DNA from: Octopus sinensis
Taxonomy: Eukaryota
Assembly (NCBI RefSeq): GCF_006345805.1
Contig: NW_021826492.1
Location: forward strand, 1 to 12,673
DNA length: 12,673 nucleotides
Direction of reading: 5' to 3'
The notes under the pieces are model-generated. The model did no database searches and was not told where the DNA came from. It saw nothing but the letters and a program-made list of their open reading frames with translations. Position 1 is the first letter of the stretch, and each line of letters starts with the position of its first letter. Position numbers and translations under genes: made by a program. Shown here piece by piece: positions 74-12,061 of this stretch.

Positions 74-92
74 TTGTGTGTGTATATATATA

Positions 93-138
<46 letters not shown>

Positions 139-241
139 TATATATATATGTATTATATATAATATATATATATATATACATATATATGTATGTATGTATG
201 CATGTATGTATGTATGTATGGATGGATGGATGGATGGATGT
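74..241. repeat. Compound microsatellite (TG)n-(TA)n-(TATG)n-(GATG)n
   Basis: Runs are directly visible; they explain the Y/I-rich ORFs at 15-453. Confidence 0.95.
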
Positions 242-475
242 ATACATCCACATATGCATTTTCGTTTGTATATGGATATACATAGATTTATTTTAAAATG
301 TAGATGCAAACAGAAGGGCCATAACATTGAATGTGCTTGTTTGCGTGGACGATGCCGTAGGGTATGAGAGTGTTTCCGTGTGTGTATGTGTGTGTGCTCG
401 TGCGTTCGCGAGTACGTGTGTGTGTGTAATAAAATAAAAGTACAAATAGGCAAACACCTGTTATCAGATCAGAAT

Positions 476-580
476 ATATGATACATATATATTATACATA
501 TATATCATATATACATGTGTATATATATATATGTATGTATGTTTATATATATATATGTATGTATATATATATCTCTATAC

Positions 581-627
<47 letters not shown>

Positions 628-786
628 AATATACATATATATATATGAATATAGATATATATACATATATATACATATATATATATATTATATATACATA
701 TATATATATAGATATATATATATATACATATATATACATATAATATACATATATATATAAATATATTTATATATATACATATATAT
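476..786. repeat. Imperfect (TA)n microsatellite
   Basis: About 310 bp of TA repeats with occasional C/G interruptions. Confidence 0.95.
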
Positions 787-1204
787 GCCTCTCTCTTTCT
801 CTCCCTCTCCCTCTATGGTTGTATATGTGTCTGCGTACTATACACCTAAACTTATATATATGTACGGAAACACATACATACAACGTGCAACAGACATACA
901 AACACATATTCTGGAGACGCCATAATAAATAGGAAAGTATTTCAATGTCTTCCTAAAGCAAACCCGGTTCAATATAATTTTAAATAAGAATTACTTTTAA
1001 AAAATATCATTATATTTCTTTCATCAATTTACCTTTTTGTTTGTTTGTTTGTTTTTGCTTTTGTTTTGTTTACATTTTTTTTTCTTTCTTAAATTCATAT
1101 AATTTTACTCTTTTTATTCTAGAAATTTCTGCAATCAAAAATTCAAGAGAAATCATTAAAATTTGACGTAATTATCTCCAATAAAATTTTGATGAATCAC
1201 ACAA

Positions 1205-2604: not shown

Positions 2605-3244
2605 ATTCTTCTTTCTTCTTTCTGCCTTTAATCATTCAACGCGGAGTATAGGCCACTTATGAATTCCATGTCGCATAATTTTTCGCTTCTGTACTTATAC
2701 TCTGCCATGAATGTCCCCCTTTCTCTAGTTTCTTTTGTGTTGATCTAAGCCATGAGTTCTTAGGCCTACCTCTCTTTCTACATCCATCCGGTTTCCACTG
2801 TAAAACACTTTTCGCTACACTTGGTATGTCTTTTCTAATTGTGCTACCAATCCACTTCCACTTTTTCCTAAATATTTGCTCCCTAATCGAAACTTGATTT
2901 GTTCGTTGCCATAGCTCCATATTGCTTATGTGTTGGGGCCATCTAATTTGAAGTATACTACGCAAACATCTGTTGATGAATGATTCTATTTGCTTATTTG
3001 ACTTAACTGTTGTTCGCCATGTCTCAGCCCCATACAATAACACCGCTTTTACGTTAGTGTTAAAAATTCTTATTTTGTTCTTTATTGAAATTACACTTGC
3101 GCTCCAAACTTTTTTCAACAGGTGAAAAGCGGTCCTTGCCTTACTTATTCTCGTCTTAATATCTTCGTCGGTGCCACCCGAGAACAGTATCTTACTACCT
3201 AAATACGTAATCAAATTGATTACGAAAACACTGATAGTTGACAA
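2605..3244 (-). mobile_element. 5'-truncated RTE-clade LINE (end of RT domain plus C-terminal region of ORF2)
   Basis: ORF 2657-3253 carries TYLGS, RISKARTAF, KIRIFNTNVKAVLLYGAETW, WKWIG and GCRKRGRPKNSW, typical of RTE ORF2 C-termini. A 1-nt frameshift near 2660 restores the ending FISGLYSALND-stop (stop 2628-2630). Short (GAAAGAA)n tail at 2606-2622; 11-bp flanking duplication GTCT(A/G)TCATAT at 2594-2604 and 3245-3255. Confidence 0.92.
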
Positions 3245-3648
3245 GTCTGTCATATGTAGGCATCATCAATAAACATCAACCGTATACATCAGACATTTGC
3301 ACCATACACAGACATCAAACATAAACATTACACACAGACGTCGTACAAAGACATTTCCTCAATTATGCAAATGTACAACAGATTCGAACTTGGAATGATA
3401 ATGATACTGAATTAGTTTGTCACTCCACCATACATTATAAGCAATGTTGTTTTAGTTATTGTTGTTGATTTTTAGCACTAGCTCAGCACCAATCTGATCG
3501 AATAGTGTCATGATCATATCTGATAAAGGTTTATCGCATCTTGTCATGATATGTTGCTTTCAGCTCGTCTATTTCACTGGAACATGTAGCTTTTGATGGG
3601 TATAATAATGTGGAATTACTTATACAGCGTGGGGAAGCGTGTGATAAT

Positions 3649-3879: not shown

Positions 3880-4232
3880 CATAAATCATATATTCCAGAC
3901 GTGACCATCTCCTTAGATTTTAGAAATAGTGTGTCATAGGAGCATGGTCGGAAGAATAAGGTGGAGGAGGAATTTTTTCCCAACCAAACACTTCAATGTT
4001 CTGTGATGTGATTTTTGCAGTGTGGGATCGCACATTGTCCTGATGAAACACCACTCATTTTCGATTCACTAAAGCGGGTCTTTTTTCTTTTCTTCAAAGC
4101 TTGGTTCAAACGCTCTAAATGCTGACAGTAGACTTGAGCATTGATTGTTGCATTAGGTGGTAACAATTCAGTGTGAATTACTCCTTTACAATCCCACCAG
4201 ATAGTGAGAAGAACCTTTTTTCCATGAATTCC
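3880..4232 (-). pseudogene. Decayed mariner (DD34D, Mos1/SETMAR-like) transposase fragment
   Basis: Minus-strand translation gives GIHGKKVLLTIWWDCKGVIHTELLPPNATINAQVYCQHLERLNQALKK, then after a frameshift RPALVNRK*VVFHQDNVRSHTAKITSQNIEVFGWEKIPPPPYSSDHAP. These match the mariner HQDNARPH and HPPYSPDLAP motifs. Frameshifts, a stop and an apparent internal deletion follow. Confidence 0.9.
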
Positions 4233-5039
4233 ATCTTCCATAACTAGAGAGTCTTCTTTAATCATTTCACCACTGGAGAAGTTTGGAAGGAGTTCTTTCT
4301 GCAATATGGACACATTTATTTAAATTTATCTTTCCCTCGCACTCAACCATCTCTGATCAACCATTGCTCCAAATTGCTCCCCAGACCATCACAAAATAGC
4401 TGCTGTGTTTCATTGCTGGTTGCAATCTTTTCACATCAAATTCTTGATGACAGAGTCTCCAGACCCACACTCGACCACTGTCAAGAACTACAGCAAATCT
4501 GAACACATCAGAACATATAACAGTGTCCCAAAATGCTAATGGCCTCTCCACCATCTCGCTGGCCCAATCTTTTCTCCGCTTCATATTGGCTGGTCAAAGA
4601 TGTGGCTTCCTTCTTGCTGCTCTGCCATAGTAACCAAGTTTATGGAGATACCTAACATCTGTTCTGGGACTGGCATCAACTTGCTCTGCTATGTCAGAAG
4701 TCTTACAACGAGGATTATCCTCCACACTTCTTTTAGCAAAGAGAAGGGTCCTGTCAGAGGCCCCTGGTTGATCTGGACAAGGTGATGTGAACTCCTTCCC
4801 CTTTCTGGTGAATTCACTCTGTTAACTGTAGAAAGCGGGATCTCAAGGTTTTCTGCGATTTTACACTGACTATATCCACCTTCAGAATCACTTCTTTTGT
4901 ACATGGCATGATTAAACAGTCACATAGAATCTGAAACATAAAAATGTCAATTAATTAGAAATATTAACTTTTACAAGTTAGAATAAACAAAAAAAAACGA
5001 TGTTTTATGGGGTGTCTATTTACTTCTAACATGTGTGTG
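4230..5039 (-). mobile_element. Decayed Tc1-like (DD34E-type) transposon, left end to second catalytic Asp
   Basis: Repaired translation from ATG at 4909: MPCTKE...GYSQCKIAENLEIPLSTVNRV (HTH), ARRKPHL, WDTVICSDVFRF (first Asp 4507-4509), VMVWGAIW, and SILQKELLP...MEDG (second Asp 4233-4235). There are stops and frameshifts. A putative terminal repeat CACACACATGTTAGAAGTAAATAGACACCCC abuts a TA run at 5040-5050; this boundary is less certain. Confidence 0.88.
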
Positions 5040-5265: not shown

Positions 5266-5329
5266 ATGAGGTAGACGCCACTGATGAGATCCCAATAAGG
5301 TTCGAAAATCGATTAAGGTTGTTTATCAT
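5266..5329 (+). ncRNA. Degenerate type I hammerhead ribozyme
   Basis: Core CUGAUGA 5281-5287; stem II GAUCC/GGUUC (one U.U) with loop CAAUAA; GAAA 5304-5307; palindromic stem III AAUCGAUU 5307-5314; UUA triplet with predicted cut after 5315. Stem I is imperfect, with an A.A mismatch next to the core. Confidence 0.6.
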
Positions 5330-5384: not shown

Positions 5385-5660
5385 ATGTTACATATAATGT
5401 GAGAGATATATAGATAGGTGTGTGTACAAATAAACATTTATTTGCATGTCGGCATGTATATATGAATATTATTGTTAGTCGACGTACGTGAATATATTTT
5501 ATGCGTGTATCAAGATAGATGCGTACTTGCAAGTATGTGTATAGACGTGTATGAATGAGTCGGTGAATGAAGGTTTGTCTTTGTGCATATATATGTGTCT
5601 GGCTGTACGTGTGTGTTATTGAGTGTGTGTGTGTGTGTGTTGATATGCGTGTGTGTGTTT
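5385..5660. repeat. Degenerate TA/TG-rich low-complexity region ending in (TG)n
   Basis: Alternating purine-pyrimidine sequence with a (TG)n run at about 5623-5658. Confidence 0.7.
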
Positions 5661-5784
5661 GTTTTGTGAGATGATGTTTATCGTGTTTTGTTATCGATTT
5701 TTTTTTATGTTTTTGCTGCAGTAAGATCAAACTTCACATCTTTCCGAGTCAACAATCACACATCTCACTACGTGTGTGGAGATA

Positions 5785-5939
5785 AAGAGAGAGGTTGGGG
5801 TAAGAGAAGTTGAGAAGAGAGAGAGAGAGAGAAGGGTCTGGAAATATAGAATAACGTAGGGAGGTGGGGTGAAGATTTGGACGGTGGCGGAGAAGACTGT
5901 GAGAGAAAGAAGCAATAGATAGGTACATTCAGAGAGAAG

Positions 5940-5971
<32 letters not shown>

Positions 5972-6115
5972 AAAAGGGAGCGACAAAGAGGAACTGTAAG
6001 AGGGAGAGCGATACGGAAAATGAGAACCCGAAGAAAGAAAGATATACAGAGACAGGGAGTGTGAGAGAAGGGGAGATATAAGAAAGAGAGAGCGAGACTG
6101 AGGGAGGGAGGAAAA
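5785..6115. repeat. Purine-rich tract with (GA)n microsatellites
   Basis: (GA)n runs at about 5815-5832 and 5941-5967 within a GA-rich background. Confidence 0.85.
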
Positions 6116-6164
6116 TTATGTATGTGCTTGTGTATGTCCGTATTTGACTATACGATGAGTATGT

Positions 6165-6168
6165 GTAA

Positions 6169-6200
<32 letters not shown>

Positions 6201-6287
6201 AAGTGTGTGCGCGCACGTATGTATGTGCGCACGCGCGTGAGTGTGTGTGTCAGTGTGTTTGTGTGTGTGTGTGCGCCCGTGTGTGTG
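6165..6287. repeat. Imperfect (GT)n microsatellite
   Basis: Directly visible GT runs with GC interruptions. Confidence 0.9.
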
Positions 6288-6424
6288 GTTTGTGTCTTCG
6301 ATAACGGATGTACATGCTCCGGCTCCACAACGAACACAGCAGAACATTTTAGATACAGTTGAGATACAAGATCTACAGTTGTGGGTTTGACATCTAAGAC
6401 TCCTGCAGATCAATAACATAGACA

Positions 6425-6575
6425 TAATACATTTATATATATTTGTGTATGTATACATTATGCATGCGTATATACACACGTATATACATACACACACTCA
6501 TATACATACACATGCTCCCATATGAGTATACACACGCACACACATATACATATGTAAGAATATATATGTATGTGT
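6425..6575. repeat. Degenerate (TA)/(CA) microsatellite
   Basis: Alternating TA/CA/TG low-complexity sequence. Confidence 0.75.
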
Positions 6576-7337
6576 GCGTGGTCATGATTGTAAGCATACA
6601 TAATGTGTACACATGTTTCTACACGATATTTTGGGTGTCGTATATTATTACGTATATTGTTACGTATCGGCATATAACTTCATCTTACGGTTTCATATTA
6701 CTTTTTCGTGGAAGTTGATCTAGGGTCGGTTTTCCAGTTTTATCCTGCTTAAAAAAAGTTTTGCTACATAAGTTAGAATGATTATACTTCAGTAGTAGCA
6801 GATAATATTCTTCCTCATGTCTCGCTGCTTGTGTTGACTTTCAAAGGCACAAGTGGTACTTTAAGGAACCAGTCACACTAACCTGAAAATGGGGAAGCTA
6901 ACCCCCGATGACATTGTCCTTCTTCTCGACCTAGTAAGAAAAGGGAAGTCCGTTTCTAAGTTGAGGATATGCATAGTCGCGAAGACTTCTTGCTGGGATT
7001 CTTATTTGAAGCCTTTCTAACTTTCGCTTTTTGTCAATGACACTCCCCTCCTGGGCCGCAGTTATTTCTCACAAATAAAAACAGATCGACATGGTTGTCA
7101 GCTGTTGTCCCTGTAGTGTAGGAATCAGTGAACTTTTTTAACCAATTATCCCAAAATATATTTATTTACGCCGACTGTACCTCCTTGATTTGAAATTAAT
7201 AAAATCACAGATCGGATTCTTTGAATGCGAAAGATTTATTGAATCTATTTATATGAAGAATACAATTATAAATATAAAAAGTATAAGGTAAATGCTATAA
7301 AATAAATTGAAGGGGTTGCAGTCATCTCAGCGAGCGA

Positions 7338-7401
7338 GACTGGCTACTCTGGACTGACGACGAGCAATAGACTCAGAAACATATGTCTTCAGGTACCTGT
7401 C
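7338..7401 (+). ncRNA. Type I hammerhead ribozyme with tertiary-contact-type stem I
   Basis: Core CUGACGA 7354-7360; stem II GAG/CUC with loop CAAUAGA and a C.A closing mismatch; GAAA 7376-7379; palindromic stem III ACAUAUGU 7379-7386; canonical GUC triplet 7385-7387. Stem Ia is UCUGGA/UUCAGG (6 pairs, 2 of them G.U), followed by internal loop CUAC/UA and stem Ib GACUGG/CCUGUC (one U.U). Confidence 0.85.
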
Positions 7402-7676
7402 CCAGCTGGTGGGGGTGATTGCCTCCCCTTTGCAAATATAAGAACACAGAAAATGTGTCAAAGCCGACAGGAAACATCGATGTTTCCTAGGGCTAAATGG
7501 TGGTAGTGTAATTCCCTTACGGGACTGTCACATTGAGTTGACAGTATACGACCACTATACCGCTCCACCACCGCTCATGTCTCTCTGAGATATTTAGAAA
7601 TTCAATATTTCTAATTTCGAAACAAAAGAAGTTTTCTAGAAACTTTTTTTACTTCATGTTTTGGTGAAATGGTATT

Positions 7677-7903
7677 GGCGAGTTGGCAGAAACGTTAGCA
7701 CGCCGGGCGAAATGCTTAGAGGTATTTCGTCTGCGTCACGTTGTGAGTTCGAATTCCGCCGAGGTCGACTTTGCCTTTCATCCTTTCGGGGTCGATAAAT
7801 TAAGTACCAGTTACGCACTGGGGTCGATGTAATCGACTTAATACCTATGTCTGTCCTTGTTTGTCCCCTCTGTGTTTAGCCCCTTGTGGGTAATAAAGAA
7901 ACA
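7677..7903 (+). mobile_element. Full-length tRNA-derived SINE, family A (octopus-type)
   Basis: A-box-like TGGCAGAAACG at 7684 and B box GAGTTCGAATTCC at 7745-7757. Central GCCTTTCATCCTTTCGGGGTCGATAAATTAAGTACCAG, hairpin GTCGAT-GTA-ATCGAC (7823-7837), possible short TSD GGTATT (7671-7676 and 7904-7909). Related copies lie at 2289 and 8101. The octopus attribution is from memory. Confidence 0.85.
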
Positions 7904-7960
7904 GGTATTGTTTCAATTTTGTAACAATTACATCAAAATAGGGGCATTTTGAAGCCAGAG

Positions 7961-7963
7961 CTA

Positions 7964-8011
<48 letters not shown>

Positions 8012-8067
8012 CCTATCCATCTATCTATCTATCTTTCCATTTATCCATCTATCTACCTATCTTTCTA
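7961..8067. repeat. (TCTG)n-(TCTA)n tetranucleotide microsatellite
   Basis: Directly visible. Confidence 0.95.
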
Positions 8068-8100
8068 CATTTAGAAATATACTTTAATATATAGCATTCT

Positions 8101-8264
8101 GACATCTCGTCCGTTTTTACGTCCTTGGTTCAAATTCCGCCGAGGTCAACTTTGCCTTTCTTCCTTTCAGGGTCGATAAAATAACTACCAATTAAGCACT
8201 GGAGTCAATGTAATCAACTTACCCCTCCCACGAAATTGCTGGCCTTGTGAGAAAATTTGAAATC
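8101..8264 (+). mobile_element. 5'-truncated SINE family A copy with a different 3' tail
   Basis: 8119-8220 aligns with 7746-7840 (GGTTCAAATTCCGCCGAGGTCAACTTTGCCTTTC...CACTGGAGTCAATGTAATCAACTTA). The tail then diverges (CCCCTCCCACGAAATTGCTGGCCTTGTG). Confidence 0.85.
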
Positions 8265-8275
8265 GGTATATCACA

Positions 8276-8667
8276 GGCGCATAAGTGGCTCTGTGGTAAG
8301 TAGCTTGCTTACCAACCACATGGTTCCGGGTTCAGCCCCACGGCGTGGCACTTTGGCCAAGTGTCTTCAACTATAGCCTCGGGCCGACCAAAACCTTGTG
8401 AGTGGATTTAGTAGACGGAAACGGAAAGAAGCCCGTCGTATATATGTATATGTGTGTGCATCTGTGTTTGTCCCCCCCCCCCAACATCGCTTGCAAACCA
8501 ATGCTGGTGTATGTACGTCCTCGTAACTTAATGGTTCGGCAAAAGAGACCGATAGAATAAGTAGTAGGCTTACAAAGAATAAGTCCTGGGGTCGATTTGC
8601 TCGACTAAAGGCGGTGCTCCAGCATGACCGCAGTCAAATGACTGAAACAAGTAAAGAGAGAGAGAGA
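8276..8667 (+). mobile_element. Full-length tRNA-derived SINE, family B (octopus-type)
   Basis: A box TGGCTCTGTGG 8286-8296 and B box GGTTCAGCCCC 8329-8339. CORE-like start CACTTTGGCCAAGTGTCTT, internal TA/TG microsatellite, hairpin GTCGA-TTTGC-TCGAC 8591-8605, and an AG-repeat tail. A second copy lies at 12518. Confidence 0.87.
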
Positions 8668-9125
8668 TTATATAATATTCTGCATCAGAAATGCAGAGTG
8701 CTGAATAAGAGTCTTAATAAGTTTCATAGAGCTTATTATATCAGAAATACATGCGAGAATATACATTTAATAGCCATGAAACCCGTAAACATATACAATG
8801 CCGAAACAAACATTTCTGTGCTGAACGTAAGAACTACAGTTTCATGTGAGTGTGTAGTCTTTAGCGTGGTGGAAAGACCGTAGTTGTAACGTCGGTAAAT
8901 CGTATCAATGTTGCAAGGATTTAAGCTGATAAACCCAATGGAGTCTCAGGTTGAAATTATTCGTCATGTGAGGGAAATTAAATTTTCACTTCACTCATTG
9001 TAAATTGAGAAATACTTTTGGTTGCACATTATATAACATGAGTTAATTCAGCATGTGAAATAATTCATATTAATCTTTGAAAGCAATTCTCAATGTTTAG
9101 ATATGCTTCTACGTATACAATCGAT

Positions 9126-9308
9126 TATCACCGTCATCGTGACCGACCAGGCTATCAGATGTTGCTACACATCGCTGGTCACAATGCGCTTCGCATAGGT
9201 TTTAGCCTTCAAATGACGCCACCCCGCTGGCTAAGCGAGCAGGCCAACAGAAGAAAGAGTGAGAGAAAGTTGTGACGAAAGAGTATAGCAGGGATCGCCA
9301 CTACCCCC
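9126..9308 (-). mobile_element. 3' portion of a further octopus-type SINE (head missing)
   Basis: GC-rich segment GGGGGTAGTGGCGATCCCTGCTATACTCTTTCGTCACAACTTTCTCTCACTCTTTCTTCTGTTGGCCTGCTCGCTTAGCCAGCGGGGTGGCG...GGTCGGTCACGATGACGGTGAT, which I recall as the body and tail of a high-copy octopus SINE. There is no second copy in the window to confirm this. Confidence 0.65.
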
Positions 9309-9384
9309 TACGTTTTTGCATTGTTTCTTCATGGAATTGAGTACACATACTCTTATTTTGAGTGCTATATTTCCTGTTTGCACC

Positions 9385-9830
9385 GAATACCTGTATATAT
9401 AATATATATGTAAATATAAGTATGCAGACATACACATATGCATAGGTATAACACAGATGAGCATAAATATTCATTCATATATATGCATGTATGTATACTT
9501 ATAATATATATAAGCGTTGTACACGCACATACACATATAACCATGTATAACTGGTCACATCTTAGGCATCTTCACTTATCAACAAACATGCGCACACACT
9601 TACACAACTACAGGTACCTTCATACACAAACACATATACACACATACAGATAGATATATCTAGATATACTCAAAGACACGCACGTATACGCACACTGTCA
9701 ACATTTACAGACACCGACGCGCTCATACAAACGCACATGTGCATACACACCTGGAGATATGCACACACACACACACGCACGTGCACACACACACACGCAC
9801 GTGCACATACACGTATAAACACACCTGCAT
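9385..9830. repeat. Degenerate (CA)/(TA) microsatellite region
   Basis: Long alternating purine-pyrimidine sequence with (CA)n runs near 9762-9800. Confidence 0.75.
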
Positions 9831-10054
9831 ACGCAGATGTTCGACACACTTTATTTATTTACACATTTTCCATCGCTGAAACCAACCAACCGACCCACAG
9901 CGAACAAAAAAAAAATGAAAAGCATTAAAAATGAAGAAAATGTCGATGTAGAAACCTCTACCCCCTTTGAACCCGAATACATAAATAGATAAAGAAATAA
10001 AATAAAATAAACAATCATTACAAACAAATCAAATAAACACCATCATGGCGAAGA

Positions 10055-10181
10055 TATATATAATATATATATATGTATGTATGTATATATATATATATAT
10101 ATAGATATATATATAGATATATATATATAGATAGATAGATAATAGATAGATGATAGATAGATAGATTGATAGATAGACAGA

Positions 10182-10225
<44 letters not shown>

Positions 10226-10382
10226 TAGATAGAATAGATAGATAATAGATAGATAGATATAGATAGATAGATAGACAGATAGATAGACAGATAGATAGAT
10301 AGATAGATAGTAGATAGATAGATAATAGATAGATAGACAGATAGATAGACAGATAGATAGACAGATAGATAGATAGATAGAT

Positions 10383-10432
<50 letters not shown>

Positions 10433-10455
10433 CAGATAGATAGATAGATACAAAG
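10055..10455. repeat. (TA)n followed by a long (GATA)n/(GACA)n microsatellite
   Basis: About 320 bp of GATA/GACA units; they explain the IYLS-repeat ORFs. Confidence 0.97.
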
Positions 10456-10512
10456 ATATATATGCATAAACAGATATAATATAGACATTGAATATTATAT
10501 GCATATGTTTTT

Positions 10513-10515
<3 letters not shown>

Positions 10516-10575
<60 letters not shown>

Positions 10576-10645
10576 GTACATATTTATACATGTGCTTACA
10601 AGTATATATATATATTTGTATCTATGTGTATATCTATGTATATAC
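10516..10645. repeat. (TA)n microsatellite with degenerate continuation
   Basis: Near-perfect TA run at 10519-10561. Confidence 0.95.
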
Positions 10646-11154: not shown

Positions 11155-11340
11155 TTCATTTCTTCTTCATCGTTTTCTTCTCTTCTTCTTCTTCTTCTTC
11201 TTCTTCTTCTTCTTCTTTCTTCTTATTCTTCTTCTTCTTCTCTTTTCTTCTTTCTTCTTCTTTCTTCTTTTCGTCTTTTCTTTTTCTTCTTCTTCTTCAC
11301 CTTTTTCTTCTTCTTCTTCTCTTCTTCTTCTTCTTCTCCA
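11155..11340. repeat. (CTT)n microsatellite, imperfect
   Basis: Directly visible; it explains the poly-L/S/F ORF. Confidence 0.95.
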
Positions 11341-11375
11341 GCTTTCTATATCTCATATCTTGGATATACAGGCAT

Positions 11376-11377
<2 letters not shown>

Positions 11378-11416
<39 letters not shown>

Positions 11417-11420
11417 ACAC
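11378..11420. repeat. (AC)n microsatellite
   Basis: Near-perfect AC run. Confidence 0.97.
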
Positions 11421-12061
11421 ATTCACATCCCTCTGCAAATTCATACGTATACACTAACATGAATACAAGCATATAGGTTTTTACCAGAGCCTATACACAG
11501 ATAAATACATATACACACATATATAGATAAAATTTACTTACATACATATACAAAGTGAATCTGTAAATTACAGTACACACTGTGACCACTTGCTGTCACT
11601 TACTGGAACAATAACGGCATCTACTCTTCTGGCCAAGCAAAATATATGCCGCATTTATTCTACCCTGAGTATCTTTATTTCCTCACCCCACAACACTAAC
11701 AATTAGACCCCATTGGAGCCTCTTACCCAATCTTTCTTTCATCAATTACTACAGCTTAAGAAGCTATTGCAACGCCTCCTGCTTTTACTTTGCGCACAAT
11801 GCAACAGGAAAGCTCTTGGCTACCTCTCTTCATTTTATCAAATTGGCCGTGGAGGCCTTACAGAGAAGCAATGCGGGAAGGACAAAATGACAAATACGAA
11901 TGATGTAAATGGGAAGAGTATTTTGGCTGCCTCTCTTGCTACACATTCAGTATCCTGAAAGACTTATGCTGACGAACGCTTTTCCTTGACATAGCAATAA
12001 TGGTCTCGGAAAGATTAGTCTTACTCACCAGAGCCAGAATATTTTCTTACCCATATAACTA

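What the first reader, a model, noticed from the sequence alone, without database searches (positions are those of the whole stretch)
7338..7401. Near-canonical type I hammerhead ribozyme with Sm-alpha-like architecture
Seen in sequence: the conserved core nucleotides (CUGACGA, GAAA, GUC) are in type I order, with a palindromic stem III (ACAUAUGU) and a two-part stem I whose internal loop contains UAC six pairs from the core. Established: the Schistosoma Sm-alpha hammerhead has the same six-nt-then-UAC arrangement and a CAAAUA loop II that form the tertiary contact. Palindromic stem III is typical of metazoan hammerheads that cleave as dimers, as in Penelope-like elements and non-LTR retrozymes. 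Inference: the main core defect, C7361.A7375, would be a C-G pair if 7375 were G (a CpG-type change), so the ancestral family may be active and may make circular RNAs. Predicted cut after C7387.
Basis: partly seen in the sequence, partly recalled or inferred. Interest (0 to 1): 0.85.

Follow-up and report, generated by a model that had tools for sequence, protein, structure and literature searches.

The report
Solo relic of animal hammerhead ribozyme
The flagged 64 bases are a real but isolated and slightly flawed copy of the self-cutting "hammerhead" RNA motif that small mobile elements scatter through many animal genomes; a second, more decayed copy lies 2 kb upstream, so this is a new example of a well-known thing, not a new kind.

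Summary
At 7348-7393 (+) every invariant hammerhead core base is present in type I order: CUGACGA 7354-7360, GAAA 7376-7379, GUC 7385-7387. Helix I is 6 bp, helix II is short, and helix III is the palindrome ACAUAUGU.

Rfam finds nothing, even at E<=10. That null is uninformative, because a hammerhead family with clear covariation, which I pulled from metagenomes, is equally invisible to Rfam.

A covariance model built only from four experimentally cleaving retrozyme hammerheads (coral, mussel, two axolotl) scores the site 23.3 bits (E~4e-5 in the window). The metagenome control family scores in the same range.

Helix I continues as a ~120-nt RNA-type hairpin (7309-7431; distal arms -43 kcal/mol, z=-5.7). 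The same model finds a second, decayed hammerhead at 5275-5322 (+). Two such motifs occur against 0.002 expected per shuffled window.

There is no tandem copy, no Penelope-like coding region, and no flank homology between the two sites. The source genome could not be reached, so copy number, the family consensus and the proposed G at 7375 are untested.

Best reading: a solo relic of a canonical metazoan type I hammerhead (retrozyme / Sm-alpha-like class), probably weak or inactive at this locus. It is a new member of a known kind, of low-to-moderate interest.

The parts
7309..7347 (+). Distal 5' arm of extended helix I (closing stem); includes UAC at 7345-7347, six nt upstream of the core
   Evidence: It pairs with 7394-7431 at -43.2 kcal/mol, z=-5.7 against shuffled arms; 0 of 502 in-window control pairs reach this value. 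Pair list.
7348..7353 (+). Helix I proximal 5' strand (positions 2.6-2.1), UCUGGA
   Evidence: Six pairs with 7388-7393. Aligned full-length by model R1.
7354..7360 (+). Catalytic core C3-A9, CUGACGA
   Evidence: Read directly from the sequence. Matches the core in the R1 alignment.
7361..7375 (+). Helix II and loop II: C7361 opposite A7375 (non-Watson-Crick), then G7362-C7374, A7363-U7373 and G7364-C7372; loop CAAUAGA at 7365-7371
   Evidence: the 'v' mark on the first helix II pair. A precedent for a mismatch here is axolotl Ax353, which has U.U.
7376..7379 (+). Core G12 A13 A14 A15.1 (GAAA)
7379..7386 (+). Helix III: 8-nt palindrome ACAUAUGU. In a monomer this gives A15.1-U16.1 and C-G with an AUAU loop; in a dimer it gives an 8-bp intermolecular helix.
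   Evidence: The dimer cofold uses the intermolecular helix: -31.4 kcal/mol against 2 x -12.3. Validated retrozyme hammerheads have the same design.
7387..7388 (+). Predicted scissile bond after C17 (GUC|U)
   Evidence: Inferred by alignment to the marked cleavage sites of four validated retrozyme hammerheads. Cleavage itself was not tested.
7388..7393 (+). Helix I proximal 3' strand (positions 1.1-1.6), UUCAGG
7394..7431 (+). Distal 3' arm of extended helix I
   Evidence: Helix I contains 7 G.U pairs against at most 1 A.C apposition. The + strand folds at -51.8 kcal/mol and the - strand at -38.7.
7432..7580 (+). Downstream structured segment: a perfect 20-nt palindrome at 7469-7488 and a three-way junction at ~7497-7560. 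It may belong to the same element, but the boundaries are undetermined.
   Evidence: 7300-7620 folds at -107 kcal/mol, z=-4.76. No Rfam family matches. The link to the hammerhead is inference only.
5275..5322 (+). Second, more decayed type I hammerhead relic: ACGCCA CUGAUGA GAUCC-CAAUAA-GGUUC GAAA, palindrome AAUCGAUU, A17, then AGGUUGU
   Evidence: R1 scores it 14.4 bits, E=0.017. It is also a hit of the helix-I-free descriptor. There is no flank homology to the 7354 locus and no stable surrounding fold.

Best explanation
The site is a genomic relic of a canonical metazoan type I hammerhead ribozyme. This is the class carried by small non-autonomous retroelements: non-LTR retrozymes, Sm-alpha-like SINE-type repeats, and relatives of Penelope-like-element repeats.

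An RNA read from the + strand would fold into a three-way junction:
- Helix I is long and open. Six proximal pairs are extended to a ~120-nt imperfect hairpin at 7309-7431.
- Helix II is short and hairpin-capped.
- Helix III is minimal, and its palindrome ACAUAUGU is too short to be stable in one molecule.

In the parent family (inferred by analogy with validated retrozymes), multimeric transcripts of tandem copies would let two hammerheads pair through the palindrome. Each would then cut after GUC, here between 7387 and 7388, leaving 5'-OH and 2',3'-cyclic phosphate ends. A host tRNA ligase joins such ends into a small circular RNA, which is reverse-transcribed and reinserted.

This particular locus is a solo copy:
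- It has no tandem partner.
- It carries a non-Watson-Crick C.A apposition between the core and helix II.
It is therefore most likely weakly active or dead and does not itself make circular RNA.

Shown: the motif, its statistical excess, its score under a model of validated ribozymes, the long RNA-type hairpin, and a second relic nearby.
Inferred: homology to the retrozyme/Sm-alpha class, the dimer mechanism, the cleavage site, and inactivity.
For: - The complete core in type I order, and the only descriptor hit in the window against 0.002-0.006 expected.
- Model R1, built only from four experimentally cleaving retrozyme hammerheads (PMC7229834 supplement), aligns 7348-7393 end to end at 23.3 bits, E~4e-5. 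The next unrelated window hit scores 8.9 bits.
- The same model scores an independent hammerhead family at 19-27 bits. That family shows covariation: 7 of 12 pairs have compensatory changes, and 0 of 500 shuffles reach the observed value.
- Helix I extends into a hairpin far stronger than its background: -43.2 kcal/mol, z=-5.7, 0 of 502 controls.
- The hairpin is strand-asymmetric, with 7 G.U pairs against at most 1 A.C, and -51.8 against -38.7 kcal/mol. This fits selection or origin at the RNA level on the + strand.
- With the core forced unpaired, the hammerhead fold is within 3 kcal/mol of the MFE.
- The architecture matches the published definition of canonical metazoan hammerheads (PMC4209133) and the four validated examples, all of which have GAAAC plus a palindromic helix III.
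- UAC + 6 nt + CUGAYGA and loop II CAAUA.. mirror the published Sm1-derived ribozyme (alignment).
- A second hammerhead relic with the same layout lies at 5275-5322 on the same strand. That gives two hits against 0.002 expected, which implies hammerhead-bearing repeats are common in this genome.
- A cephalopod genome paper reports 235 Rfam Hammerhead_1 loci (PMC6962438). The window's cephalopod origin is unverified.
Against: - No Rfam hammerhead model reports the site, even at E<=10 on 81 nt. This is mitigated by the failed positive control.
- The conserved G10.1-C11.1 pair is replaced by C.A in the direct register.
- No other copy, tandem repeat or homologous flank exists in 12.7 kb.
- No family members could be retrieved. 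A 66-aa ORF across the site has no relative among 5.8 billion proteins, a specific DNA pattern gave 0 metagenome hits, and the source genome is not on record.
- There is therefore no covariation evidence for this element itself.
- The 64-nt segment alone is not unusually stable (z=0.08).
- Scaled to a multi-Gb genome, 23 bits alone would be expected by chance a few times.
Confidence: 0.7

Rival explanations
1. Chance look-alike. A long inverted repeat or hairpin exists here for another reason, such as a foldback or MITE-type DNA repeat or a hairpin-RNA or miRNA-like precursor. Its 34-nt tip happens to spell the hammerhead core.
For: - No Rfam hammerhead hit.
- No family copies could be found.
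- The 10.1/11.1 pair is mismatched.
Descriptor hits at ~0.002-0.006 per 12.7 kb would amount to hundreds per Gb-scale genome.
- 12-nt perfect inverted repeats at 6750-6761 and 7640-7651 could be ends of a DNA element.
Against: - Given a pre-existing hairpin, I estimate the chance that its tip carries CUGANGA, a paired helix II, GAAA, a palindromic helix III and UH in the right register at about 1e-7 per hairpin. This is my calculation from base frequencies, not a tool result.
- A second hammerhead motif in the same window is expected 0.002 times.
- Shared peripheral details with the Sm1 ribozyme were not part of any descriptor.
- The G.U-rich strand asymmetry argues against a purely DNA-level palindrome.
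- No miRNA family matches.
Confidence: 0.12
2. A domesticated single-copy hammerhead that still works at this locus. It would process a host transcript, for example within an intron or UTR, as the intronic and 3'-UTR hammerheads of amniotes and rodents do. The long helix I hairpin would replace the need for a dimer.
For: - The core is fully intact.
- Helix I is unusually long and stable.
- The hammerhead fold is energetically accessible.
- A validated axolotl ribozyme tolerates a mismatch at 10.1/11.1.
- Isolated hammerheads are known in mammals (PMC7229834 discussion).
Against: - Helix III is only 2 bp plus a 4-nt loop in a monomer. That design gives poor monomer cleavage in the validated examples (PMC4209133, PMC7229834).
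- No gene, exon or Pfam domain was detected within 6650-10000 in any frame.
- The surroundings are transposon fragments, SINE-like repeats and microsatellites.
- Cross-species conservation could not be assessed.
Confidence: 0.08
3. A hammerhead of a Penelope-like element (PLE). The site would be the remnant of a pseudo-LTR. C7361 would be the characteristic extra nucleotide between A9 and G10.1, and G7362-C7374 would be the true G10.1-C11.1 pair.
For: - PLE hammerheads conserve an extra nucleotide after A9, a G10.1-C11.1 pair and a palindromic 15.2-16.2 with loop 3 (PMC4209133).
- Most genomic PLE hammerheads occur as single, dispersed motifs.
- Cephalopod genomes carry PLEs (PMC8557442 and PMC6962438).
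- The insect-metagenome family with the same loop II has exactly that extra U.
- A 2026 preprint argues that retrozymes derive from PLE pseudo-LTRs, so this rival overlaps with the best explanation.
Against: - No RT or GIY-YIG remnant in any frame of 6650-10000.
- The only RT fragment is RTE-type. It lies on the opposite strand 4 kb away.
- PLE minimal hammerheads have a long helix II (6-8 bp) and a short helix I (4-5 bp). Here it is the reverse.
- This reading leaves A7375 as an unprecedented extra nucleotide between C11.1 and G12.
- The two window hammerheads share no flanks, so they are not the two pseudo-LTRs of one element.
Confidence: 0.1

Closest known systems
Type I hammerheads of metazoan non-LTR retrozymes (coral Amil224, mussel Mg353, axolotl Ax353/Ax330; Cervera and de la Pena 2020, PMC7229834)
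   Same: - Type I topology.
- 6-bp helix I with a closing stem beyond an irregular region.
- 4-position helix II.
- GAAAC followed by a palindromic helix III and a GUH cleavage triplet.
- Low GC content.
- Full-length alignment to a model built from these four sequences (23.3 bits).
- Ax353 also has a non-Watson-Crick apposition (U.U) at 10.1/11.1 followed by G-C.
   Different: - Retrozymes are defined by tandem arrays of 150-450-bp units and by expressed circular RNAs. Here there is one copy and no repeat.
- Expression is unknown.
- The apposition here is C.A, and loop II is 7 nt.
Schistosoma mansoni Sm-alpha / Sm1 hammerhead (Ferbeyre 1998; crystal structure Martick and Scott 2006; N79 derivative sequence in PMC12550524)
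   Same: - UAC, then six nucleotides, then CUGAYGA on the 5' strand.
- Helix II of four positions.
- Loop II starting CAA and containing AUA (CAAUAGA against CAAAUA).
- A GUC triplet.
   Different: - Sm1 has G10.1-C11.1 and a 6-nt loop II.
- In the window the 3' strand also reads UAC, so the UAC can pair instead of forming the bulge that makes the tertiary contact.
- No pol III or tRNA-like head was detected.
- No sequence similarity beyond the motif.
Minimal hammerheads of Penelope-like elements (Cervera and de la Pena 2014, PMC4209133) and the insect-gut-metagenome family found here (L001-L036)
   Same: - Dispersed single copies.
- Palindromic helix III.
- Possibly an extra nucleotide after A9.
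- Loop II AAUAGA, identical to the insect family. Note that this similarity was imposed by my search pattern.
   Different: - PLE motifs have a long helix II, a short helix I and no helix I-helix II loop contacts.
- They lie in pseudo-LTRs next to an RT-GIY-YIG ORF.
- None of this is seen here.
Rfam Hammerhead_1 (RF00163) and other Rfam hammerhead families
   Same: Same ribozyme class and topology. 235 Hammerhead_1 loci were reported in a squid genome (PMC6962438).
   Different: The site does not reach even E<=10 against any Rfam family. Nor does a hammerhead with clear covariation used as a positive control.

Membership tests
Hammerhead ribozyme (any type) | Core C3 U4 G5 A6 N7 G8 A9 | tested here: met
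   CUGACGA at 7354-7360.
Hammerhead ribozyme (any type) | Core G12 A13 A14 and the A15.1-U16.1 pair, followed by H17 (not G) | tested here: met
   GAAA at 7376-7379, U7386 and C7387.
Hammerhead ribozyme (any type) | Three helices radiating from the core | tested here: met
   Helix I has 6 bp plus a ~30-bp extension. Helix II has 3 Watson-Crick pairs plus C.A. Helix III has 2 bp as a monomer or 8 bp as a dimer.
Hammerhead ribozyme (any type) | Conserved G10.1-C11.1 pair closing helix II | tested here: inconclusive
   In the direct register the pair is C7361.A7375 (not met). If C7361 is the extra nucleotide known from PLE hammerheads, G7362-C7374 fits, but A7375 is then unaccounted for. Validated Ax353 has U.U at this position.
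Hammerhead ribozyme (any type) | Significant hit to a curated covariance model (Rfam) | tested here: not met
   No hammerhead family at gathering score or at E<=10. The test is weak, because control L002 567-608 is also missed.
Hammerhead ribozyme (any type) | Significant hit to a covariance model of experimentally validated type I hammerheads | tested here: met
   R1 scores it 23.3 bits, E~4e-5 (rough calibration), full length. Control hammerheads score 19-27 bits.
Hammerhead ribozyme (any type) | Covariation in the helices among related copies | not testable with these tools
   No related copy of this element could be retrieved.
Hammerhead ribozyme (any type) | Site-specific self-cleavage | not testable with these tools
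   Requires in vitro transcription or RNA-end mapping.
Canonical metazoan type I hammerhead / non-LTR retrozyme | Helix I 6 bp, helix II 4 bp, helix III 1-2 bp with a small palindromic loop (PMC4209133) | tested here: met
   Helix I has 6 pairs. Helix II has 4 positions, 3 of them Watson-Crick. Helix III is A-U and C-G with an AUAU loop inside the palindrome ACAUAUGU.
Canonical metazoan type I hammerhead / non-LTR retrozyme | Occurs in short tandem repeats (150-450 bp units, from dimers to multimers) | tested here: not met
   Single copy. No direct repeat or tandem array covers it within 12.7 kb. Solo monomers are known in such families (abstract), so this lowers the claim for this locus, not for the family.
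Canonical metazoan type I hammerhead / non-LTR retrozyme | Conserved loop 1 - loop 2 tertiary interaction | tested here: inconclusive
   UAC and a CAAUA-type loop II sit in the Sm1 positions. However, the folding energy favours pairing the UAC with GUA 7393-7395 by ~7 kcal/mol.
Canonical metazoan type I hammerhead / non-LTR retrozyme | Expressed as small linear and circular RNAs | not testable with these tools
   No transcriptome access.
Penelope-like element hammerhead | Located in a pseudo-LTR flanking an RT plus GIY-YIG ORF | tested here: not met
   No Pfam domain in six frames of 6650-10000. The upstream ORFs are RTE-type RT and mariner, both on the other strand. Most genomic PLE hammerheads are solo, so this does not exclude PLE ancestry.
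Penelope-like element hammerhead | Long helix II (6-8 bp), short helix I (4-5 bp), extra nucleotide between A9 and G10.1 | tested here: not met
   Helix II is 3-4 bp and helix I is 6 bp with a long extension. Only the possible extra nucleotide (C7361) fits.
Sm-alpha-type SINE-like element | tRNA-like / pol III promoter head with the hammerhead inside a ~335-nt unit ending in a simple tail | tested here: inconclusive
   ARAGORN finds no tRNA-like gene and Rfam finds nothing in 7400-7920. Box A and box B were not searched specifically, and the unit boundaries are unknown.

The most novel reading that the evidence does not exclude
The site is a member of a still-active, lineage-specific (possibly cephalopod) retrozyme-like family. 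Its hammerhead would naturally carry a 1x1 internal loop (C.A) between the core and helix II, sit on an unusually long helix I rod, and produce abundant small circular RNAs. The C.A would then be a tolerated or regulatory variant (for example, pH-sensitive A+.C wobble gating of cleavage) rather than decay.
Probability: 0.12. Interest if true: 0.5.

Novelty: new member of a known kind. Interest (0 to 1): 0.27.

Why it matters
Hammerhead-bearing retroelements are already known to be widespread, and sometimes hugely abundant, in animal genomes. One more relic therefore changes little.

Its modest value is threefold:
- Two independent relics in 12.7 kb suggest that such elements are common in this genome, which looks cephalopod-like though that is unverified. 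I found no dedicated description of hammerhead or retrozyme families for that group in the searchable literature.
- It gives a natural example of a non-Watson-Crick apposition at 10.1/11.1, parallel to a validated axolotl ribozyme. This is useful for asking how strict that position really is.
- It shows concretely that Rfam scans miss short-helix-III type I hammerheads, so genome annotations based on Rfam undercount them.

Tried and rejected
- Rfam at gathering score on the whole window, and at E<=10 on 251 nt and 81 nt around the site, gave no hammerhead. I rejected this as a refutation after a hammerhead with clear covariation from metagenomes was also missed. Rfam on the second motif and on 7400-7920 gave only chance hits.
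- To reach other genomic copies, I searched the 66-aa stop-free frame across the site on the minus strand against 5.8 billion predicted proteins. There were no relatives.
- Exact look-ups of three window ORFs in public assemblies found nothing on record, so the source genome and its relatives are unreachable with these tools.
- The homology search with the RT fragment returned only relatives at <=57% identity from flatworms and other molluscs, none cephalopod. I therefore gave up on sampling the genome through protein hits.
- The specific DNA pattern CTGAYGANGAGCAATAGACTCNGAAAC found 0 matches in metagenome contigs. The relaxed pattern found an unrelated insect-associated hammerhead family, which I used only as a control.
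- In-window repeat searches found no second copy, no tandem array and no convincing terminal repeats or target-site duplication.
- The flanks of the two hammerheads are not homologous, so I rejected the idea that they are the two repeats of one PLE or LTR-type element.
- Pfam on all six frames of 6650-10000 found nothing. ARAGORN found no tRNA-like head.
- The 64-nt segment alone shows no excess stability (z=0.08). Only the extended hairpin does.
- I did not identify the organism.

Full report
**1. Checking the observation**

The window is eukaryotic. It is rich in microsatellites and interspersed-repeat fragments.

The stated features are all present:
- Core: CUGACGA at 7354-7360, GAAA at 7376-7379, and U7386-C7387.
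- Helix II: C7361 opposite A7375, then G7362-C7374, A7363-U7373 and G7364-C7372 around loop CAAUAGA.
- Helix III: the 8-nt palindrome ACAUAUGU at 7379-7386.
- Helix I: 7348-7353 pairs with 7388-7393 (six pairs, two of them G.U).
- UAC at 7345-7347 lies six nucleotides upstream of the core.

The topology is type I: helices II and III are capped and helix I is open.

**2. Is it more than chance?**

- A simple descriptor (core; helix I >=4; helix II >=3, allowing a mismatched first pair; helix III >=2) finds this site as the only hit on either strand. The expectation is 0.0057 per dinucleotide-shuffled window, or 0.0017 if helix I must be >=6 bp (3000 shuffles).
- That is significant for one window, but not for a genome-wide scan.

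Two further facts carry the case.

First, helix I does not stop after six pairs. It continues as an imperfect hairpin from 7309 to 7431.
- The distal arms alone (7309-7347 with 7394-7431) pair at -43.2 kcal/mol.
- This is z=-5.7 against shuffled arms, and none of 502 equally spaced segment pairs from the window comes close.
- The hairpin contains 7 G.U pairs and at most one A.C apposition.
- It is 13 kcal/mol more stable on the + strand than on the - strand, which suggests an RNA-level structure on the hammerhead strand.

Second, a descriptor that ignores helix I altogether (core, helix II, GAAA, a perfectly palindromic helix III, H17) finds two sites in the window. They are 7354-7387 and 5281-5315, both on the + strand. 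The expectation is 0.002 per shuffled window, and 0 of 4000 shuffles gave two or more.

**3. Covariance-model tests**

Rfam:
- Rfam 15 reports nothing at gathering score.
- It reports no hammerhead family at E<=10 on 251 nt or 81 nt around the site.

Positive control:
- A relaxed pattern scan of metagenome contigs returned 36 loci. About 33 of them carry one clear hammerhead family, for example ACAAC CUGAUGA U GGCC AAUAGA GGCC GAAAC AU GUA|GUUGU.
- On 16 distinct sequences, 94.9% of cells are paired and 7 of 12 pairs show compensatory changes. No shuffle or slid control comes near.
- A representative of this family is also invisible to Rfam at E<=10.
- The Rfam null therefore says little about type I hammerheads with a minimal helix III.

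Independent model:
- I built a model (R1) from four hammerheads whose self-cleavage was shown experimentally. They are coral Amil224, mussel Mg353, and axolotl Ax353 and Ax330, with sequences and marked cleavage sites from the supplement of PMC7229834.
- With filters off, R1 aligns 7348-7393 end to end at 23.3 bits, E~4e-5 for the window (calibration is rough).
- The insect-metagenome hammerheads score 19-27 bits with the same model.
- The best unrelated hit in the window scores 8.9 bits.

**4. The second motif**

R1's second hit is 5275-5322 (+), at 14.4 bits and E=0.017. It reads ACGCCA CUGAUGA GAUCC-CAAUAA-GGUUC GAAA, then the palindrome AAUCGAUU, A17, and AGGUUGU.
- It has the canonical G10.1-C11.1 pair.
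- It has a U.U inside helix II, an A.A at 1.1/2.1 and a decayed helix I.
- It has no stable surrounding fold.
- Its flanks share no similarity with those of the main site. The two are therefore independent insertions of different families or ages, not the two repeats of one element.

**5. Anatomy compared with known hammerheads**

- PMC4209133 defines the canonical metazoan type I hammerhead as helix I of 6 bp and helix II of 4 bp interacting through loop nucleotides, with helix III of 1-2 bp capped by a small palindromic loop. The site fits this definition.
- All four validated retrozyme ribozymes have GAAAC followed by a palindrome and a GUH triplet: ACAGUACUGU, ACGCGCGU, ACACGUGU and ACAUGU. 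The site has ACAUAUGU.
- The published Sm1-derived N79 ribozyme reads GCAGG UAC AUCCAG CUGAUGA GUCC CAAAUA GGAC GAAAC.
- The window reads CUGGC UAC UCUGGA CUGACGA CGAG CAAUAGA CUCA GAAAC. The second motif reads GAGG UAG ACGCCA CUGAUGA GAUCC CAAUAA GGUUC GAAA.

Whether the UAC forms the tertiary contact is another matter:
- The 3' strand also reads UAC.
- Nearest-neighbour energies prefer a register that pairs UAC 7345-7347 with GUA 7393-7395 (-47.6 kcal/mol) over the Sm-alpha-like 3x3 internal loop (-40.8).
- With the core forced unpaired, the best structure is the hammerhead junction at -48.0 kcal/mol, only 3 kcal/mol above the unconstrained minimum.
- Two copies cofold through an intermolecular 8-bp helix III at -31.4 kcal/mol, against 2 x -12.3 for two monomers.

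**6. The 'defect'**

C7361.A7375 replaces the usually conserved G10.1-C11.1 pair. Three readings remain open:
- A natural 1x1 loop. Validated Ax353 has U.U at the same place followed by G-C (CUGAUGA U GCC CACUA GGC U GAAAC). It cleaves weakly as a monomer and better as a dimer.
- C7361 is the extra nucleotide between A9 and G10.1 that PLE hammerheads conserve. G7362-C7374 is then the true G10.1-C11.1 pair, which leaves A7375 as an extra base.

Without family copies I cannot choose between them.

**7. Context**

- There is no tandem repeat, second copy or convincing terminal repeat around the site.
- No Pfam domain is detectable in any of the six frames of 6650-10000, so no Penelope-like RT or GIY-YIG remnant adjoins it.
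- Upstream, on the opposite strand, lie an RTE-type RT tail (2660-3253; DUF6451) and a mariner transposase fragment (3996-4313).
- Downstream lie SINE-like repeats.
- 7300-7620 as a whole is strongly structured (z=-4.76). It includes a perfect 20-nt palindrome and a three-way junction after the hairpin. This may be the rest of the element, but the boundaries are undetermined.

**8. What could not be done**

No tool here holds cephalopod or other animal genomes as DNA. Every attempt to reach related copies failed:
- A protein-space search with an ORF across the site.
- Exact look-ups of window ORFs.
- A specific metagenome pattern.

Copy number, the family consensus, covariation for this element, expression and cleavage all remain untested. 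The organism is unverified. For context, a giant-squid genome paper lists 235 Rfam Hammerhead_1 loci (PMC6962438). I found no paper describing hammerheads or retrozymes in octopus.

**9. Verdict**

The most likely explanation (about 0.7) is a solo relic of a canonical metazoan type I hammerhead of the retrozyme / Sm-alpha-like class. Its ancestral family would cleave as dimers through the palindromic helix III and cycle through small circular RNAs. The copy at this locus has no partner and carries a non-canonical base apposition next to the core, so it is probably weak or dead.

Rivals:
- A PLE-derived solo hammerhead (about 0.1, overlapping with the main reading).
- A chance core at the tip of an unrelated hairpin (about 0.12).
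- A domesticated single-copy ribozyme (about 0.08).

It is a new member of a known kind. The interest is low to moderate.

Noticed in passing
window 5275-5322 (+): A second, more decayed type I hammerhead motif. It has a perfect core including G10.1-C11.1, loop II CAAUAA, palindromic helix III AAUCGAUU and UAG six nt upstream of the core. R1 scores it 14.4 bits. Its flanks are not homologous to the flagged site and it has no stable surrounding fold.
   Followed up: partly
L001-L036 (metagenome contigs Ga0209737, Ga0209628/9, JGI20166J26741, Ga0131853, Ga0123352-7 and others): A hammerhead family with strong helix I covariation and an extra U between A9 and G10.1: ACAAC CUGAYGA U GGCC AAUAGA GGCC GAAAC AU GUA|GUUGU. 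Several copies often occur per contig, on both strands. The contig names suggest insect-gut metagenomes, that is, host DNA, but this is unverified. Rfam misses it at E<=10. Two long contigs carry no ORF >=200 aa.
   Followed up: partly
window 7432-7580 (+): A strongly structured segment just after the hammerhead hairpin. It contains a perfect 20-nt palindrome AGGAAACAUCGAUGUUUCCU (7469-7488) and a predicted three-way junction (~7497-7560). It matches no Rfam family, and its relation to the hammerhead is unknown.
   Followed up: partly
window 2657-3253 (-): A 198-aa ORF that is the C-terminal part of an RTE-type non-LTR retrotransposon reverse transcriptase (Pfam DUF6451). The best relatives are only 49-57% identical and come from flatworms, gastropods, bivalves and metagenomes.
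   Followed up: yes
window 3993-4904 (-): Broken Tc1/mariner-type transposase. 3996-4313 matches Pfam Transposase_1 (partial DDE domain). The neighbouring ORFs 4357-4584 and 4689-4904 look like further fragments but have no Pfam hit.
   Followed up: partly
window ~7665-7900, ~8100-8240, ~8270-8400 (+): Three SINE-like interspersed repeat fragments. The first two share a core (…TTCGAATTCCGCCGAGGTCGACTTTGCCTTTCATCCTTTCGGGGTCGATAAA…). ARAGORN and Rfam call no tRNA.
   Followed up: no
window 6750-6761 and 7640-7651: A perfect 12-nt inverted repeat (TAAAAAAAGTTT / AAACTTTTTTTA) brackets ~900 bp that include the hammerhead hairpin. It is A/T-rich and has no obvious target-site duplication, so it may be chance.
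   Followed up: no
window 83-790, 1375-2245, 5600-6550, 7961-8067, 9760-9812, 10054-10644, 11160-11421: Very dense microsatellites and low-complexity tracts: (TA)n, (TGTA)n, (TC)n, (GAG)n, (GT)n, (CTAT)n, (TTC)n and (AC)n. They generate long spurious ORFs such as 5727-6497.
   Followed up: no
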